A stretch of DNA of 63,943 nt, filler included, from Octopus bimaculoides (taxonomy: Eukaryota): NCBI RefSeq assembly GCF_001194135.2. It is 8 parts of 7 records of this genome, joined end to end, with 100 filler letters (N's around TTAATTAATTAA, not from the genome) between each part and the next. Parts side by side here need not be neighbours in the genome. Positions count along the whole stretch, not along the records: positions 40,932 to 51,515 come from NC_068983.1; 7 more parts are not named here. The stretch is one strand, 5' to 3'. Below the pieces are notes generated by a model. That model was not told where the DNA came from, did not search any database, and saw nothing but the letters and a program-made list of their open reading frames with translations. The translations under genes were made by a program, and so were the position numbers. This document shows, piece by piece, positions 40,932 to 49,818 of the stretch (position 1 is the first letter of the stretch; each line of letters begins with the position of its first letter).

Positions 40932-41590
40932 AGGCCTCACCGATGCAATGACTTCTGACCGAGACCTTTGGAAATATGCTGTGCATGAGAAGACCCGGCA
41001 AGCCAAGTGAGACCAAAATCCAAGGCCTCTGCCAGGGATGTAGCCAGCCCACTTATGCGTACTCCACTTGCGAAGACCTGTTGAGGCAAGTGAAATCGAA
41101 ATGGAACTAAATTCGACGACTGGCCCCCATGCCAATGTCTCCTCCATTTGACACTAAACTCTGCTTGCGAAGACCTGTTGGGGCAAGCGAAAGCGAAATC
41201 GTGATGGCACCACCTTTTGAGCGTGATCGTTACTAGCGTCGCCTTCTTGGCATTTGTGTCGCAGCTTTGCGTTCCTGGTACGTGAAAAGTCATTTGAGTG
41301 AGATCGTTGCCAGTTCCTCTGGACTAGCTCCTGTGCAGTTGGCATGTGAAATACACCATTTTGAGCGTGGCCGTTGCCAGTACCGCCTGACTGGCCTTGG
41401 TGCCGGTGGCTCATAAAAGCACCCACTACACTCTCGGAGTGGTTGGCGTTAGGAAGGGCATCCAGCTGTAGAAACTCTGCCAAATCAGATTGGAGCCCGG
41501 TGTAGCCATCTAGATCACCAGACCTCAGTCAAATCGTTCAAACCATGCTAGCATAGAAAGCGGACGTTAAATGATGATGATGATGACATA
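40932..41590 (+). mobile_element. RTE LINE 3' end (ORF2 terminus, 3' UTR, (GAT)n tail)
   Basis: GLTDAMTSDRDLWKYAVHEKTRQAK* followed by UTR ending GGACGTTAAATGATGATGATGATG. Confidence 0.8.
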
Positions 41591-41782: not shown

Positions 41783-43056
41783 TCAGGTCATTAAGAATGA
41801 AATGTCCGATTTAAAATGAAAGTTTATTTTACTTTATCTCAACAAAAAGCAATGCAGTTGATCAATGTATGCACCTAAATTATCAACACAATTTTGCCAT
41901 TTTATCGGTAGCTTATTTATGTTGGCAGCAAAGAATTCTGGAGAGCAAAAGGTGATGAAATCATGAAAGGCTGTTTTTGTATCTTCTTCAAGTTTAAAGT
42001 TTTGCCTTGCAAAATGTTGTCTAATGGCTGGAAAATGTGATCATCAGTAGGTGCGAGGTCTGGTGAATATGTTCTTGTAACTTGAATAGTGTTCTTTGTG
42101 CAACATGTGGCTGAGCATTGTTTTGGAAGAGAATTGGCCTGGCTCTATTGACCAATCTCAGTTGTTTAATTACAACTTCACTCATCATTTCATCCAATTG
42201 GTTGATGCATGCATCCACTGTAATTGACTTACCCAGTCTCATGAAACTGTAGTGGATGATACCAGCACTGGACTACCAAACAGACACCATTAGCTTTTTT
42301 TGGTGACTATTCTTTTTTGGATTGTATCTTGGCACTTCATCTCTATCCAACCACCATGCAGAATGCTTGCTATTGTTGAAGAGAATCCATTTTTCATCAC
42401 ACTTAACAATACGATGCAAAAATAGTTCACTTTTATTCCATGACAGCAAAGAACAGCAAGTTTCAAGACGTATCATTTGATGCTCTTTCACTTCATGTGG
42501 TACCCATTTGATGCTCTTTCAGTTCATGTGGTACCCATTTGATACTCTTTCAGTTCATGTGGTACTCATTTGTGCAGCTTCTTTACTTTCCCAGTTTGTT
42601 TCAGATGATCCAATGCAATGCAGTTGGAATCGAAACATCAAACCTTGCTGCCAACTCACGCATAGTTTGAGATGTATCTGCTTCCACTACAGTTTTCAGC
42701 TCATCATTATCCACTTTAGTCTCAGGTCTTATAAAGGACTGATTTTCAAGAGTAAAGTCACCAGACTGGAACTTCTCAAACCATCAATGTACAGTGCGCT
42801 CATTCACATCTTCACCAAGCACCTCAGTGATGTTTCAAACTGTCTGGAATGCATTGGTTCCATGACAGAACTCATATTCATAAACAATATGAATTTTCAT
42901 TTATCCATGGGTTCACAAAAACTGATTTACAAGAGAAACTCACAATATAATCAGACACTATGAATTGCATTTTGAAAAGTGATGATGTAACTCTTCGATG
43001 TTGTAAAACAAAGAATTGTCATTAGAGTTAGCGATATTTCATTCTTAATGACCTGA
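41783..43056 (-). mobile_element. Near full-length decayed mariner
   Basis: TIR TCAGGTCATTAAGAATGAAAT at both ends (CA/TA flanks); WVPHEL and RIVKCDEKWI motifs. Confidence 0.9.
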
Positions 43057-43099: not shown

Positions 43100-46000
43100 T
43101 TGAATCCCTCTCTTTATCTCTCCCTCCTAGCTCTTAACTCTACACCTACATACAGATCATACTTATACCCCCAATGCACACAGAATGAAGTGAATAATAC
43201 AGCAAAGATGTCAAGAAATTGGAATGCCTCAGAAATAAACCTGTTTCTCAGAACTTGGGCAGTAGCTGAAAACAATTCTCCCAAAAACGTTATCACTTCA
43301 ACACTAAATAGCACAGGATTCAGCAGGTCCATTGCACAAATAGAGTGGAAGAAAAGTGTATTCAACCACTTCTACACACTCATCAGACCACATCTAGAGA
43401 AGCTGGAAACCATTTTTAAAAATGGTGAATCCTTAGGTAAAATACCTGATACAGAGAACAGTCCCAACACTGAACCCTCGAATAGACGACCCAATAAGGA
43501 AGGCACTAAAAAGGCCACCATGAATGAAGTTACCTAAGTTCATGGAGATGGAGAAATTGAAAAAAAAAGAAACACAAAAAGCCCCTTAGAAAAGCAGCCC
43601 CAACACCACCTCCTAAAACACTGGGAAAGGTAAAGGAACTGTGAAGCCTGTTGAAAGAGAGGCCAGTACCAAAAAAGTATGAAAAAAAAAGAAACAAAAA
43701 GGAAGAGAAATATAATTAGAAACAAGATGTTACATGAAGCATGTACCATTTGTAAATTTCATGCTAAAGGTATCTGCTGGCATTGAGAGATAAGGACAAA
43801 CTGCCACTTTGCACATCCAAAGCTCAAGCAGAATGGTACATGTGGCAAAACACACCTCCAAGGTAGGACAAACCCATGCTCAGAGAAACTCTTACCACAC
43901 TACAGGCCTGCAACAATGACTAAAAAACTATGCAAATGCAGTGTGAGCTACAACCATAGAGCAACAAAATTTTGTAAGTGTGGCTCAATTACAGGCCCGG
44001 GATGGCTACCATTACCACAAAGCTGGCAATCACACCAGTTCTTTTAATAAATATTAGGTTTCCTACAAAGCAACAACAATAAAAAAAATTGCATACTTGA
44101 GGGATCTTTCTGCATGCAATCAAGTGATATGCATTGCACGTACAGAGACACATCTCTTTGCAAATATAAATGACACAGAGATATACACACCAATGGCGGA
44201 GTTGCATTATATATCTATGAAGATATCACACCATTGACCCTGTTGTCACACTCAAACTCAGTCTGTGACACACTCATAGTGCATTTAATATAACTTGATG
44301 TGGTAACATGCACCCTGTATCGCCCCCTCATGCCTCAAAATCATGATGGTAAATTTGAGGAAATGATAAAAGTACTAGCAAAACTGGATCAAAGTGTTAA
44401 TATACTTCTGATAGGTGACTTCGACTTTGCCAACATCAGATGGCCTGAAGGCCACATAATCTCAGGAATGACATGCAAAGGATCTCTGCTTAACCTCCAA
44501 AAATGTTGTTCATGGAGCAAACAATACTCTCCCCAACCAGAAATGGTAACATGTTAGACCTCTGTTTCACCAACAATGTAGGTCTTATCCGCTACATTAA
44601 GATAACACCAACAATTTTCTCAGATCACAACATGGTTGAACTGACAATGTGTGGTCAAAATCAATTAATGATGTATTCCACACAGATGGCACCCAAACTC
44701 TGTCTGGTTTAAACTTCTACAAGGCTGACTGGAAGTCAATTGAAAAATGGATTATCTGATGAAATTGATCTAAAAGTCTCTCTATGCCACACATTGATAT
44801 GAAACTTAAAGAATTCATGTCAATAATGCAAGTCATATGCATAAAATTTTTTCCAGAGAAGAGAGCAACCACATACAAAAACATCATTCCTCAAGACAGG
44901 AGAGCCCTTATGAAACAGAGAATAAAGATCTCCAATTGCTTAAATAAACAACTTATTGACAAGAAGAAATCTCTTCTAGAAGAGAAATTTTTAGAGATCG
45001 AAAATTTACTCAGACTTTCTCATGAAAAGAAAAGGGTAGAAAGAGAAACCAAGGTGGTGAAAAATATAAAGTTTGCAAAAGAGTCTGCTTCAGTATACTA
45101 CAAAATAGGGCCACTGTTTGAAGATGGCTCGCTAACTGCAGACCCCAAGAGGATAAATGAAGTACTAAATAAGAAATCCCAGAGTGTCTTCACCTCTCCA
45201 CTGGAAAACTGGTAAGTGTGTAAGCCAAAAGAGTTCTTAAATACTGCAGACCTATATGGGAAAAGGTAACCATCGATTACATCAACATAAGGATGTAATA
45301 TTGGTCATTGATGAGATGAGCTCAAATTCAGCAATGAGCCCAGATGGATTTCCATCTGTTCTAAAAACATGCAAGAAAGTTCTTGCAGATACTTTTTCAG
45401 AGACTCCTTACATGTGGAAAACTTCTCAAATTGTTAAAAAAGGGTGTCATATGCCCTGTCCATAAAAGAGCAGATGCTAAAAATTATGGGCCTTTCTCTC
45501 CGATTTCACATGTTAGCAAGGTCATGGAATGCATTGTCAAGAGACTGATCATGTTCCTGGAAAAGAATAACTTGCTCACACACAACATGGTTTCTTCCCA
45601 GGGAGGAGTTGCCTCACACAGCTACTACAAAATAAAGGAAGATAAGAAGAAAGATGAGCCAGAAGAAAATGCAGATGATATTGAAATCAATGCCATGATT
45701 CTGTCTGCTCGGTGTTGGCCCACATTCAGAGAAGAGAAACTCAACTTGGCTGAAAATATGCAGACTTGTTTGGAGAATTACACCAAAAAGTTTGAATCCA
45801 GGAAAGGAAATCGCACGTTGACATGGAAACCCCATTTAGGTCTGGTCAACATCGATATTGAACTAAAAGAGAGAGACCTCAACCTGAACGTCTCACCTGT
45901 ACATGCAGCTATCATAATGCAGTTTCAAAATAAAGACCAGTGGACAGTTGAAGAGCAACGAGCTAACTCTGATGATATTATGCTTGCTGATGAAGAAGAG

Positions 46001-46880
46001 ACAGAATCTGCCATGGCATCGATGAGGACTCAAATGGAAGAGCAAATGCAGGTTTACTGGACATACATTGTTGGTATGTTGACCAATCTGGAAAGTCTCC
46101 CCATTGAGAGGATCCACTCGATGCTGCATATGTTTGCTGTACAAGGTCCTTCTTCTGTGGAATGTAGCCTGGCTGAACAGAAGGCCTTCCTTGACAAGAA
46201 AGTGAATTGGGTACTGAAACAGCAGCTCAACTGCTCAAATGTGGATGTGATATATCTCGAATTTACTAAGGCCTTTGACAAAGTTGGTCATGAAATGATA
46301 TGTCACAAACTACACGACCTTGGTATCACTGGAAAACTGAGAGAGTGGCTGCATGACTTTTTAAAAGACAGAAGATAAACAGTTGCAGCAAATAGTGCTC
46401 TCTCTCTGGAGAGACAATCTGCAGTGGAGTTCCTTAAGGAACTACTGGGGCCACCACTGTTTGTAGTGGCTCTCACAGACATGCCTTTAGTTGTACATTC
46501 AGCTACATTGGTGATATCAAAGTATCCCAGGTGGTCAAGAACCCTGATGACCTAGCAAAACTGCAAAATGACCTGTATGCAATATACAAATGGGCTGATG
46601 AAAATAACTTGCAGCTCAATGCTGATAAGTTTCAAGCACTCTGCTATTGGCCCACAAACTGACTACAATTGGAATACATAGGAATACAGTGGAATCCCAG
46701 AATTAGAATTGGTACATAACCTGAGGATCCACATGAGTAATGATGCAACATTTCATGTTCATATTATCAAGATGGCAACACTGTGCAGGTGAGTAGCTGA
46801 ATGGATCCTTAGATGATTCAGAACCTGAATTAAGAATGCCTTCCTCCTATGGAGGACATTTGTCCTCAATCATCTGAATT
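43100..46880 (+). mobile_element. Decayed CR1/L2-group LINE: ORF1-like region (Myb/SANT-like plus CCCH finger), APE endonuclease, RT
   Basis: ILLIGDFDF and LDLCFTNN..IFSDHNMVE (APE); KGVICPVHK..AKNY, VDVIYLEFTKAFDKV (RT); the YADD region near 46500-46520 looks damaged. Confidence 0.85.
45629..46204 (+). pseudogene. ANAPC2: Intronless ANAPC2 (anaphase-promoting complex subunit 2) C-terminal fragment inserted in the LINE RT
   Basis: INAMILSARCWPTFREEKL..YTKKFESRKGNRTLTWKPHLGLVNIDIEL..VSPVHAAII and YWTYIVGMLTNLESLPIERIHSMLHMFAVQGP match, from memory, APC2 ILSSEFWP../RTLSWK..LGLV/FWTYIQAMLTNLESLSLDRIYNMLRMF. Confidence 0.92.
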
Positions 46881-47222
46881 AATAGCAGTCAAATCTTGAC
46901 TCTAAACTACAATAAATGTTCATATAGCACCAGGGGCAAAGACGAAGAGACAAAATAAACAAGCAAAAATTACTGGATAATTCCAGATCCCGGATTTCTG
47001 GCTTTGCATAAGAAATGCTTTGCCTCATCAGTGGAATACACTCAGAAAAGCATATAAATACTAATATATATATATAACATACGATATACTTACATATACG
47101 AATGTATACATGCATATATATGCACGTATGCACACATATGCAAACTCCTCGTGCGATATGGTCAGAATATCACCGCAGTAAATATATATGTATGTATACG
47201 TTCGTATATGTAAGTATATCGT

Positions 47223-47263
<41 letters not shown>

Positions 47264-48103
47264 NNNNNNNNNNNNNNNNNNNNNNNNNNNNNNNNNNNNN
47301 NNNNNNNNNNNNNNNNNNNNNNNNNNNNNNNNNNNNNNNNNNNNNNNNNNNNNNNNNNNNNNNNNNNNNNNNNNNNNNNNNNNNNNNNNNNNNNNNNNNN
47401 NNNNNNNNNNNNNNNNNNNNNNNNNNNNNNNNNNNNNNNNNNNNNNNNNNNNNNNNNNNNNNNNNNNNNNNNNNNNNNNNNNNNNNNNNNNNNNNNNNNN
47501 NNNNNNNNNNNNNNNNNNNNNNNNNNNNNNNNNNNNNNNNNNNNNNNNNNNNNNNNNNNNNNNNNNNNNTATATATATATAGATAGATAGATAGATAGAT
47601 AGATAGACATATATGTGTGTGTGTATGTCCGTTTCACCCCCACCCCCTCCCCATTCCCATTCCCACGATCGCTTGAAAAGTACTAGGCTTACAAAGGATA
47701 AATCCCAGGGTTGATTTGCTCAACTAGAGGAGGTGCTCCAGCATGGCCACAGTCAAATGACTAAAACAAATAAAACAATAAAAGAATATATATATATATC
47801 ATCATCATCATCATTTAATGTGACAATGGCACGGGTGCTAGTTATACGACACTAGCATTGGCCACATTATCTCTGTCAGGAACAATGCTCGAAAGATGCT
47901 CTGTACATGCTACTGGCACAGATGCCAGTTATGTGGCTCCAGCATCGGTCACAACTACGATTTCACTTGGCTCTATGTGTATATTTGTGTGTGTGTAAAT
48001 ATATGTGCATGTATGTATATATATGTATATGTGTATATATATATATGCATGTGTATATATATATGTAAATATATATATTTATATACATAAATGTGTAATG
48101 GTG

Positions 48104-48850
48104 TCCGTCTGTGTGTGTGTTTGGGGTTACTCTCCAACCGATTTTAATGATTTTTGGCACATAGGGAGATCACACACCCTGAAGTTCAAATAAGGCCAGA
48201 ATTTTTCGAAAACTTGATAATGCTCGGTTGGCATTGATTTTTGTGAGCTCAATCGTGCGTTTGAATGGAAATTCCCATAACAATGTTATTTTTCCTGCAG
48301 CTTTTGCATTTTCTGTCCGATTTTGATGAAAATCGATGAGTGAGCAAGGCTCATGGCAGTGAGTTGATGTCAGTATATGGCATTGACAAAAAGTCGATAA
48401 TCGCGCCTGGCCAGTGGTTTTATAAAATCAATAGGCTTTTTGCATGCAAATACCCGTAAGGATTTTATTTTTGGCTATAACTCTTATATTTTTACGTAAA
48501 TGGTCACATGGATTTTATTTTATGACATAACCTTAACACTTTTCTTCAGATTTTGCTGAGATTGGACACGCTTATCAATTTTGTACAGGGGGTGGCATTA
48601 AGGGGAGAGAAATAAACAAACATCACTCTCAACGGGTTGAGTTACACCCAAAAGTTTGACTGCGATTTCAGACAGTCCAGTATGTAGGAGTATGTTGAAA
48701 GCGTTAACTGGGTAAAATCCCTGCCGAACCAGATATAACATCTAAATGGGTAATAGTTGGCACAGGGAACGTAGAAGATTTCAATACAAGGTCAGAGATG
48801 GGCTTAACTTCAACATGGAAAACACGAGCAACGCCGGGTCCAACAGCTAG
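48104..48850 (+). mobile_element. Non-autonomous Helitron-like element
   Basis: 3' end GAGCAACGCCGGGTCCAACAGCTAG followed by T (GC-rich motif plus CTAG|T); 5' part TCCGTCTGTGTG..CCGATTTTAATGATTTTTGG typical of such elements. Confidence 0.55.
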
Positions 48851-49362: not shown

Positions 49363-49818
49363 TGTAAGAGGTAAAATTGGTTGGCACTGGAAGGGTGCCA
49401 CACAATCCCTTACATAAATGTTAGAGGAAAAATATCAGAACAAGAAAACATCCGAACAAAAACAATCTTTTTATTTTGTATGTACAAGGTTTACACCTCG
49501 GGACAATCAGTAGCCAAGTCTGGTGTGGAAGCAGCAAAGTCGGAGTTAATCATACTTTGTGAAGGCATTCTTCACACTAGTCCAGCTACAATGGAGCTGG
49601 TCAAATACCGAGCGTCTCAGGCAGCAGCGGAGGCGAACAGAGCTGCTAAGGACACATATCTGCATAGTTCAGCGGCTGCGTATCGAGTCTGGTGATACGA
49701 AAGAACTTTGCTGCTGCTAGTTTTCTGCGCATGCACATCAGGGACCTTTTGGCAGGCCTTCCAGAAGGTTCCAACCCTGCGCATGCGTGCTGGGGACCTT
49801 CAAAATGACGTCACTACA
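49363..49818 (-). mobile_element. Solo LTR (456 bp) inserted in the Penelope RT catalytic motif
   Basis: TGT...ACA termini; 4-bp TSD ACAG/ACGG; host frame YRDD-GL is restored on removal; AATAAA on the minus strand. Confidence 0.8.

What the first reader, a model, noticed from the sequence alone, without database searches (positions are those of the whole stretch)
45383..46378. ANAPC2 mRNA fragment embedded inside a LINE reverse transcriptase, forming one open chimeric ORF
Seen: LINE RT sequence runs ...PGRSCLTQLLQ (ends 45630). About 576 nt encoding the APC2 cullin C-terminal region and WHB follow, then RT resumes a few codons later (NWVLKQQLNCSNVDVIYLEFTKAFDKV). There is no poly(A), no TSD and no intron. 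The junctions show only short overlaps (AA/AAA left, TGA-like right). The APC2 part has no stops although the surrounding LINE is riddled with them. A frameshift just upstream puts RT-N, APC2 and RT motif sequence in one 331-aa frame. Established: APC2 is the cullin-like APC/C scaffold whose C-terminal region binds APC11 and whose WHB engages UBE2C. Inference: this fits a double template switch (LINE RNA to host mRNA and back) or mRNA-templated break repair, rather than ordinary retroposition. If multicopy, it would be a LINE lineage carrying a ubiquitin-ligase module.
Basis: partly seen in the sequence, partly recalled or inferred. Interest (0 to 1): 0.85.

Follow-up and report, generated by a model that had tools for sequence, protein, structure and literature searches.

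The report
Octopus APC2 cDNA patch inside dead LINE
A 575-base piece of spliced octopus APC2 messenger RNA sits inside an older, decayed LINE retrotransposon, most likely as a patch that repaired a DNA break; it is decaying neutrally, so it is a clean example of a known process and not a new gene.

Summary
Window 45632-46206 (+) is 575 nt of octopus ANAPC2 coding sequence. It is colinear with five exons of the O. bimaculoides and O. vulgaris genes, and four GT-AG introns are exactly removed. There is no poly(A), no 3'UTR and no target-site duplication. It replaces 7-9 nt (codons H-Y/F-D) between RT blocks ...CLTQLLQ and WVLKQ... of a jockey/CR1-like LINE copy.

The 331-aa ORF exists but is accidental. 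In the LINE's own frame the insert stops after 5 codons. An upstream frameshift opens the ORF and reads the QHGFxPGRSCLTQLL block out of frame.

The fragment is incomplete: 5'- and 3'-truncated, with a 38-codon internal deletion between two 10-nt repeats. Its changes fit neutral decay: 12 private changes, 8 of them nonsynonymous, against 0 of 16 in the parent lineages.

Three measures put the LINE about 3-4 times older than the insert: 8 stops and 8 frameshifts against 0, CpG loss, and changes at invariant RT positions.

Best reading: a partial spliced cDNA was captured at a double-strand break in a resident dead LINE (class-2 templated insertion, RT-product-mediated repair). A double template switch is less likely. 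Copy number and expression could not be tested.

The parts
44189..45630 (+). 5' portion of a decayed non-LTR (jockey/CR1-like) retrotransposon copy. It holds an endonuclease remnant (44189-44700) and the N-terminal RT up to ...QHGFFPGRSCLTQLLQ, which ends at 45630.
   Evidence: Homologue-guided frameshift-aware alignment to P0052 and P0044. Pfam Exo_endo_phos_2 1.6e-6 and RVT_1 1.5e-14 on frame-joined translations. Lesions: stops at 44291 and 45213; frameshifts at 44498, 45255, 45382 and 45578.
45383..46378 (+). It is an accidental read-through of RT N-terminal part, 16 out-of-frame RT codons, the APC2 fragment and RT block 3/A.
   Evidence: The left end is set by the frameshift at 45382 and the right end by the stop at 46376 (CAA/Q in relatives).
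45578..45580 (+). Frameshift in the LINE. It puts the upstream RT frame in phase with the insert and reads QHGFFPGRSCLTQLLQ out of frame.
   Evidence: fs event at 45578; three-frame translation.
45631..45631 (+). Single A at the left junction that matches neither the LINE relatives (C) nor the parent mRNA (C). It is either a non-templated base or a later C>A change within a 3-nt CAT microhomology.
45632..46206 (+). Captured partial ANAPC2 cDNA. It corresponds to codons I544-V772 (plus 2 nt) of the 789-aa O. bimaculoides APC2 and is in sense orientation relative to the LINE. Exon-exon joins lie at 45676|45677, 45839|45840, 45935|45936 and 46051|46052.
   Evidence: blastn to L001 (O. vulgaris) and L002 (O. 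bimaculoides): 17 mismatches to Ob and 24 to Ov over 575 nt. All four introns are removed at GT-AG sites. Protein alignment.
45947..45956 (+). Single surviving copy of the 10-nt direct repeat GTTGAAGAGC. It marks a 114-nt (38-codon) in-frame deletion inside exon 4 of the donor. The deletion is not a GT-AG intron.
   Evidence: Both parent genes carry both repeat copies and the 104 nt between them.
46207..46879 (+). 3' portion of the same LINE RT (WVLKQQLN..YLEFTKAFDKV..). The YADD box is deleted. It carries 6 stops and 4 frameshifts. Homology ends at 46879, about 176 codons short of an intact relative.
   Evidence: alignment to P0050 and P0048; RVT_1.

Best explanation
Proposed sequence of events:

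1. A jockey/CR1-like LINE copy had already been resident and decaying for roughly two thirds of its present age.
2. In the germ line of the O. bimaculoides lineage, after its split from O. vulgaris, a double-strand break occurred inside this copy. The break fell between the codons for ..LLQ and WVLK.. of the RT.
3. The ends lost 7-9 bp.
4. The gap was patched with a partial complementary DNA of spliced ANAPC2 mRNA. The cDNA was made by some cellular reverse transcriptase; active RTE and Dong LINEs are reported in Octopus.
5. The patch lacks both ends of the mRNA. It has no poly(A), no 3'UTR and no last 17 codons.
6. It was joined by end-joining with 0-3 nt of microhomology and possibly one non-templated base.
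7. It carries a 114-nt deletion between two 10-nt repeats.
8. The insert has since accumulated 12 private substitutions with no sign of protein-level constraint.

The 331-aa ORF is a by-product of the insert's youth (no stops yet) and a chance frameshift in the LINE.

Shown by the data: spliced-mRNA origin, junction anatomy, microdeletion, changes that fit neutral decay, and a LINE older than the insert.

Inferred: the break itself, which enzyme made the cDNA, and whether the cDNA pre-existed or was primed from the broken end. It is also inferred whether the 114-nt deletion arose by RT slippage or later.
For: (1) Donor is spliced mRNA. The 575 nt are colinear with 5 exons, and 4 GT-AG introns are exactly removed.

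(2) No poly(A), 3'UTR or TSD. The donor is truncated at both ends.

(3) Recipient microdeletion. All five RT relatives have exactly three codons (H-Y/F-D; CAY TAT GAC in L004 and L005) between LLQ/E and W. The window keeps at most the last 1-2 nt of them.

(4) Junctions show 0-3 nt of microhomology and one unassigned base. This is the NHEJ-type signature described for class-2 templated insertions and RMDR (PMC5110952; PMC4516963). In the latter, partial spliced Pcnt and Inadl cDNAs without poly(A) were captured at Cas9 breaks.

(5) The LINE is older than the insert.
- 8 stops and 8 frameshifts in 2019 nt of LINE against 0 in 575 nt of insert (binomial P=0.018).
- At the insert's 2.1% divergence only 1.7-2.1 stops are expected (P(>=8)=0.0004-0.0015; 0.01-0.08 at the upper bound of 3.6%).
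- CpG o/e is 0.16 and 0.07 in the LINE flanks against 0.50-0.54 in intact relatives. It is 0.32 in the insert against 0.50 in the parent.
- Of RT positions invariant in at least 4 relatives, 8 of 60 are changed in the window copy. In the insert 8 of 191 residues are changed (Fisher p=0.028).

(6) The insert's changes fit neutral decay. Private changes are 8 nonsynonymous to 4 synonymous, and all 4 synonymous ones are at CpG. Omega is 0.5, not different from 1 (p=0.27). The parent lineages show 0 to 16 (p=1.6e-4).

(7) RT activity in Octopus is documented (PMC9115989).
Against: - No true empty site was available. The pre-integration sequence is inferred from paralogous and heterologous LINE relatives that are only 59-71% identical in protein and 65-77% in DNA.
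- The age comparison rests on small counts and on assumed ancestral states, because no subfamily consensus could be built.
- An already-decayed LINE transcript mobilised in trans would also look 'older' than the insert.
- The insert is in the same orientation as the LINE. A template switch requires this; break repair gives it only half the time.
- Copy number in the genome was not testable, so a propagated chimera is not formally excluded.
Confidence: 0.68

Rival explanations
1. Double template switch during target-primed reverse transcription of this LINE. The RT copies the LINE RNA from its 3' end up to the W codon. It then jumps to an ANAPC2 mRNA and copies about 690 nt, with an internal jump between the 10-nt repeats. 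It then jumps back to the LINE RNA 7-9 nt upstream of where it left. This would be a tripartite chimera of the kind described by Gogvadze and Buzdin.
For: - All parts are in the same orientation.
- Junction microhomologies are short.
- The internal 114-nt deletion between 10-nt repeats looks like an RT template jump.
- Tripartite LINE-mediated chimeras are documented (PMC2104539).
- Another LINE relative (L003/P0052) has an internal deletion whose 3' edge also lies immediately before WVLKQ.
Against: - The return to the same template within 9 nt of the departure point is not expected from two independent jumps. It is automatic for a break.
- The LINE flanks are about 3-4 times more decayed than the insert. 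A single event predicts equal ages.
- The LINE 3' end, which TPRT needs, is absent from the copy. Homology stops at 46879 and no TSD could be defined.
- Known chimeras put the LINE or poly(A) part at the 3' end and a different RNA at the 5' end. They do not have the same LINE on both sides.
- The L003 coincidence is largely explained by similarity between ..DHN|MV.. and ..HYD|WV.. in that element.
Confidence: 0.13
2. DNA-level secondary copy. The patch was copied, or moved by repair synthesis, from a pre-existing ANAPC2 processed pseudogene elsewhere in the genome, not from cDNA at the time of the break.
For: Templated insertions at breaks can come from genomic DNA as well as from RT products (PMC4516963; PMC5110952). 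Some of the 12 private changes and the 114-nt deletion could predate the transfer.
Against: No other APC2 retrocopy was seen in anything retrievable here. That is weak evidence, because the genome could not be searched. This model adds a step without explaining anything more.
Confidence: 0.09
3. Assembly artefact. cDNA contamination or a chimeric contig joined LINE reads to APC2 transcript reads.
For: The piece comes from a gapped short-read-style scaffold with runs of N at about 41.7 kb, 47.3-47.6 kb and 50.3-50.4 kb.
Against: - The fragment differs from both octopus parent genes by 12 private substitutions, 8 of them amino-acid changing. In this region the two species' proteins are identical. 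It also has a 114-nt deletion.
- Contaminating cDNA would match the parent.
- The LINE continues in register on both sides, minus 7-9 nt. A misjoin would not produce that.
Confidence: 0.03
4. Functional chimera. This would be a trans-mobilised, multicopy LINE derivative or an expressed gene whose product uses the APC2 WHB/cullin piece, for example as a decoy for APC11 or UBE2C.
For: The ORF is open for 331 aa. The WHB-like segment is still recognisable (ANAPC2 Pfam 5.9e-17).
Against: - Changes fit neutral decay.
- 38 residues of the cullin C-terminal domain and the last 17 residues of the WHB are missing.
- The RT part cannot work: block 2 is out of frame, the YADD box is deleted and the stop at 46376 ends the ORF.
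- The insert is out of frame with the LINE ORF as it would have been when intact.
- No such protein was found among 5.8 billion proteins.
Confidence: 0.03

Closest known systems
[quoted passage not shown] 2015, PMC4516963; review PMC5110952)
   Same: - The insert is a partial, spliced cDNA truncated at both ends.
- No poly(A) and no TSD.
- Microdeletion of the recipient.
- 0-3 nt of microhomology and a possible non-templated base.
- The event is fixed in the germ line.
   Different: - This is a natural event in a cephalopod, not a nuclease-induced break in mouse or human cells.
- The recipient is itself a LINE RT gene, so paralogous LINE copies stand in for the empty site.
- The insert carries an extra repeat-mediated 114-nt deletion.
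- The break is inferred, not observed.
LINE RT template-switch chimeras, bipartite and tripartite (Buzdin; Gogvadze et al. 2007, PMC2104539)
   Same: Copies of different transcripts are fused head to tail in one orientation with short junction overlaps. More than one jump is possible.
   Different: - Those chimeras end in a LINE/SINE/poly(A) 3' part, are flanked by TSDs, and join different RNAs.
- Here the same LINE lies on both sides, with only 7-9 nt missing.
- Here the flanks are older than the middle part.
Canonical processed pseudogene / retrocopy made by LINE TPRT
   Same: It is derived from a spliced host mRNA and is decaying neutrally.
   Different: It has no poly(A), no 3'UTR and no TSD. 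The 3' end is truncated inside the CDS (51 nt before the stop). TPRT from the poly(A) tail does not produce that.
Endonuclease-independent LINE insertion at DNA lesions (Morrish et al. 2002, as cited in PMC5110952 and PMC4516963)
   Same: An RT-dependent patch at a pre-existing break, with no TSD and truncated ends.
   Different: The template here is a host mRNA, not LINE RNA. Whether the cDNA was primed from the broken end cannot be told.

Membership tests
Class-2 templated sequence insertion / RMDR | Insert templated by RNA: introns removed | tested here: met
   Four GT-AG introns are exactly absent. Five exons are colinear with L001 and L002.
Class-2 templated sequence insertion / RMDR | No poly(A) tract, no cryptic poly(A) signal use, donor truncated at both ends | tested here: met
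   The insert covers codons 544-772 of 789 and ends 51 nt before the stop codon. No A-run is present at 46207.
Class-2 templated sequence insertion / RMDR | No target-site duplication; instead microdeletion, microhomology or non-templated bases at the junctions | tested here: met
   7-9 nt (CAY TAT GA) of the LINE are missing. There is a 1-nt overlap on the right. On the left there is one unassigned A, or a 3-nt CAT overlap with one later change. The pre-integration state is inferred from LINE relatives, not from a true empty site.
Class-2 templated sequence insertion / RMDR | Recipient sequence existed before the insertion | tested here: met
   The LINE flanks are about 3-4 times more decayed than the insert, by lesions, CpG loss and changes at invariant sites. 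P values range from 0.0004 to 0.03, and counts are small.
Class-2 templated sequence insertion / RMDR | Empty orthologous site in a related genome | not testable with these tools
   No searchable cephalopod genome collection was available. Only single loci could be fetched through proteins.
LINE template-switch chimera (bi/tripartite) | All parts in one orientation, fused directly | tested here: met
LINE template-switch chimera (bi/tripartite) | Whole chimera ends in the LINE 3' end or poly(A) and is flanked by one TSD | tested here: inconclusive
   LINE homology stops at 46879, about 176 codons short of the end of the longest relative retrieved (P0050, whose own start is cut). Low-complexity DNA and an assembly gap follow. 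No ends or TSD could be defined.
LINE template-switch chimera (bi/tripartite) | All parts created in one event, hence of equal age | tested here: not met
   The LINE is older than the insert by three measures.
Canonical processed pseudogene (TPRT) | 3' poly(A) tail and flanking TSD | tested here: not met
   Neither is present.
Functional APC2/cullin-family protein | Complete cullin C-terminal domain plus WHB, under purifying selection | tested here: not met
   Only residues 544-772 are present. 38 residues are deleted and the WHB lacks its last 17 residues (Pfam ANAPC2 positions 1-47 of 60). Private changes are 8N:4S against 0N:16S in the parents.
Autonomous non-LTR retrotransposon (active copy) | Intact EN-RT reading frame with catalytic YADD | tested here: not met
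   8 stops, 8 frameshifts, the YADD box deleted and the RT interrupted between blocks 2 and 3.

The most novel reading that the evidence does not exclude
The chimera was made at the RNA/cDNA level by a LINE reverse transcriptase that left its own template and returned to it within 9 nt. The resulting LINE-APC2-LINE unit would exist in several copies, or be transcribed, in octopus genomes. That would be a non-LTR retrotransposon lineage transducing an internal host-gene module, analogous to oncogene capture by retroviruses.
Probability: 0.04. Interest if true: 0.8.

Novelty: new member of a known kind. Interest (0 to 1): 0.3.

Why it matters
It is a naturally fixed, base-resolved example of a spliced-cDNA patch at a chromosomal break in a cephalopod germ line. 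The recipient is a conserved RT gene, so the pre-break sequence can be read from paralogues without an outgroup genome.

Such events have mostly been documented at engineered breaks in mouse and human cells and as human polymorphisms. An invertebrate case suggests that RT-product capture during end-joining also operates in cephalopods. Octopus genomes are already reported to have active LINEs.

It has no bearing on APC/C biology. The captured piece is truncated, internally deleted and decaying neutrally.

Tried and rejected
1. Exon skipping or cryptic splicing as the cause of the missing 38 codons. Rejected. The deletion lies inside exon 4. No register within the 10-nt repeat gives GT...AG ends.

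2. Dating the LINE against a subfamily consensus. Not possible.
- The closest RT proteins in 5.8 billion sequences are only 59-71% identical, and the relatives are equally far from each other.
- The fetched LINE DNAs (L003-L005) are 64-80% identical.
- I used lesion density, CpG decay and invariant-site changes instead.

3. Searching for chimeric copies. The whole ORF used as a protein query returned APC2-only or RT-only hits, and none covered both parts. No tool here can BLAST a cephalopod genome, so copy number is open.

4. A template-switch hot spot suggested by L003/P0052, whose internal deletion ends just before WVLKQ. Down-weighted, because the two deletion end points in that element share about 9 of 10 similar bases.

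5. Looking for the LINE 3' end or a TSD after 46879 and beyond the N gap. Nothing was found.

6. Pfam on the neighbouring ORFs 43100-43537, 49381-49695 and 50890-51366. No hits.
Full report
**What is there**

The piece carries a decayed non-LTR retrotransposon on the + strand.
- An endonuclease remnant lies at 44189-44700 (Exo_endo_phos_2, 1.6e-6).
- The reverse transcriptase runs to 46879.
- With the frames joined by homologue-guided alignment and the middle segment removed, RVT_1 scores 1.5e-14 and spans the interruption.
- The nearest RT proteins include an O. bimaculoides 'jockey-like' prediction (P0048), an Argonauta protein and unnamed metagenome and Logan ORFs. They are only 59-71% identical.

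The ORF 45383-46378 (331 aa) exists. Its residues 84-275 are APC2:
- Pfam Cullin 8.4e-19.
- Pfam ANAPC2/WHB 5.9e-17.
- Human APC2 chains 1.8e-45, matching residues 574-681 and 716-804.

**Donor**

The best protein hit is octopus APC2: P0001 from O. vulgaris, with the 789-aa O. bimaculoides protein P0062 in the same cluster. I fetched both genes (L001, L002).

Window 45632-46206 (575 nt) is colinear with five consecutive exons. The four introns are removed exactly at GT-AG sites. The joins in the window are at 45676|45677, 45839|45840, 45935|45936 and 46051|46052.

The fragment starts at codon I544. It ends 2 nt into codon 773 of 789, which is 51 nt before the stop. It has no 3'UTR and no poly(A).

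Inside exon 4, 114 nt (38 codons) are missing between two copies of GTTGAAGAGC. One copy survives at 45947-45956. No register of that deletion gives GT...AG, so it is a repeat-mediated deletion and not splicing.

**Junctions and recipient**

Every RT relative has exactly three codons (H-Y/F-D) between ..CLTQLLQ/E and WVLK... In L004 and L005 these are CAC/CAT TAT GAC.
- In the window the LINE stops at CAA (45630).
- One A (45631) matches neither partner.
- The APC2 sequence runs to ..AAAGTGAA (46206).
- The LINE resumes with T TGG GTA CTG.

So 7-9 nt of the recipient were lost and nothing was duplicated.
- The overlap on the right is 1 nt.
- The overlap on the left is 0-1 nt. It would be a 3-nt CAT overlap if 45631 was originally C.

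**The ORF is accidental**

In the frame of QHGFFPGRSCLTQLLQ the insert reads QNKGR*. A frameshift near 45578 brings the upstream RT frame into phase with the insert. The cost is that the conserved block 2 is read out of frame.

The insert happens to be in phase with the downstream RT, which stops at 46376. The relatives have Gln at that position.

The insert itself is open simply because it is young. With 12 substitutions and a 4.3% chance of a stop per substitution, the probability of staying open is about 0.6.

**Selection and lineage**

I compared the fragment with both parent genes.

| Class of difference | Count | Nonsynonymous | Synonymous |
|---|---|---|---|
| Private to the fragment | 12 | 8 | 4 (all at CpG) |
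| Shared with O. bimaculoides only | 11 | 0 | 11 |
| Shared with O. vulgaris only | 4 | 0 | 4 |
| All three differ | 1 | 0 | 1 |

- All 16 differences between the two parent genes are synonymous third-position changes, and their proteins are identical in this region.
- Fisher's test for 8:4 against 0:16 gives p=1.6e-4.
- Omega for the private changes is 0.5, not different from neutrality (p=0.27).
- The fragment therefore belongs to the O. bimaculoides side of the split. Its changes fit neutral decay, and it is about 2.1% diverged.

**Which mechanism**

Two models fit the anatomy:
- (A) A double template switch during reverse transcription of the LINE.
- (B) Capture of a partial cDNA at a break in a LINE copy that was already in the genome.

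They differ in the relative age of the flanks and the insert, and in how they explain the near-exact continuity of the LINE.

Three measures say that the LINE is older.

| Measure | LINE flanks | Insert | Test |
|---|---|---|---|
| In-frame stops + frameshifts | 8 + 8 in 2019 nt | 0 in 575 nt | binomial P=0.018 |
| Stops expected at the insert's 2.1% divergence | 1.7-2.1 (8 observed) | - | P(>=8)=0.0004-0.0015 |
| CpG o/e | 0.16 and 0.07 (intact relatives 0.50-0.54) | 0.32 (parent 0.50) | - |
| Conserved residues changed | 8 of 60 RT positions invariant in at least 4 relatives | 8 of 191 | Fisher p=0.028 |

At the upper bound of 3.6% divergence, P(>=8 stops) is 0.01-0.08. Each measure puts the LINE at about 3-4 times the insert's age.

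Loss of only 7-9 nt at the site is what a break predicts. For two independent jumps it would be a coincidence. Shared orientation favours A by only a factor of two.

I therefore favour B. It matches class-2 templated sequence insertions and RT-product-mediated DSB repair. In that work, partial spliced Pcnt and Inadl cDNAs without poly(A) were captured at breaks, the Pcnt junction showing short microhomology (PMC4516963; PMC5110952). Tripartite template-switch chimeras (PMC2104539) remain the main rival. RT sources exist in Octopus (PMC9115989).

**Caveats**

- No true empty site was available.
- No LINE subfamily consensus could be built.
- No way to count genomic copies or check reads or expression.
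- An old LINE transcript mobilised in trans could mimic the age difference.
- A DNA-level copy from an unseen APC2 retrocopy is not excluded.
- An assembly artefact is unlikely. The fragment carries 12 private substitutions and a deletion, and the LINE continues in register on both sides.

**Verdict**

- Supported: non-canonical, mRNA-templated insertion.
- Not supported: a functional or lineage-forming chimera.

It is a new, well-resolved member of a known kind of event, of modest interest.

Noticed in passing
L003:1262-1870 (Logan SRR3401912 contig; protein P0052): A related LINE copy has an internal deletion that joins the end of the endonuclease (..IFSDHN) directly to WVLKQ.. of the RT. 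The 3' edge of that deletion is at the same RT position as the right junction of the APC2 insert. The two end points in that element share about 9 of 10 similar bases (..CATAAC ATGGTT.. and ..TATGAC TGGGTT..). This is probably a microhomology deletion and not a general hot spot.
   Followed up: partly
window 42021-42491 (-): Remnant of a mariner/Tc1-like DNA transposase, split over two ORFs. Pfam Transposase_1 scores 2.2e-7 on 42273-42491.
   Followed up: partly
window 41276-41586 and 47667-47798: Short interspersed repeats. They recur several times, at 70-92% identity and on both strands, in the introns and flanks of the APC2 genes of both octopus species (L001, L002). They are more similar to the O. 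bimaculoides copies (up to 92%) than to the O. vulgaris ones. This fits an O. bimaculoides-lineage source for the window.
   Followed up: no
window 42474-42572: Tandem repeat of a 31-nt unit, 3.2 copies, 95% matches. It abuts the transposase remnant.
   Followed up: no
L001 (O. vulgaris OX597834.1:16474415-16490244) against L002: The O. vulgaris APC2 gene appears to be annotated as two models (P0001, 503 aa, and P0063, 222 aa). O. bimaculoides has one 789-aa protein (P0062). This is probably an annotation split.
   Followed up: no
window 50890-51366 (+): Two adjacent ORFs (79 and 58 aa) contain a Cys-rich stretch..CNCKDGTSCPLEGRFLEKGIVYRAKV... It looks like a fragment of another mobile-element protein. 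There was no Pfam hit.
   Followed up: partly
window 46879-47270 and 47560-48200: LINE homology stops abruptly at 46879, about 176 codons before the end of an intact relative. TA/TG-rich low-complexity DNA follows, with (TA)n at 47229-47263, an assembly gap and (ATAG)n at 47571-47607. The LINE 3' end is either deleted or lost in the gap.
   Followed up: partly
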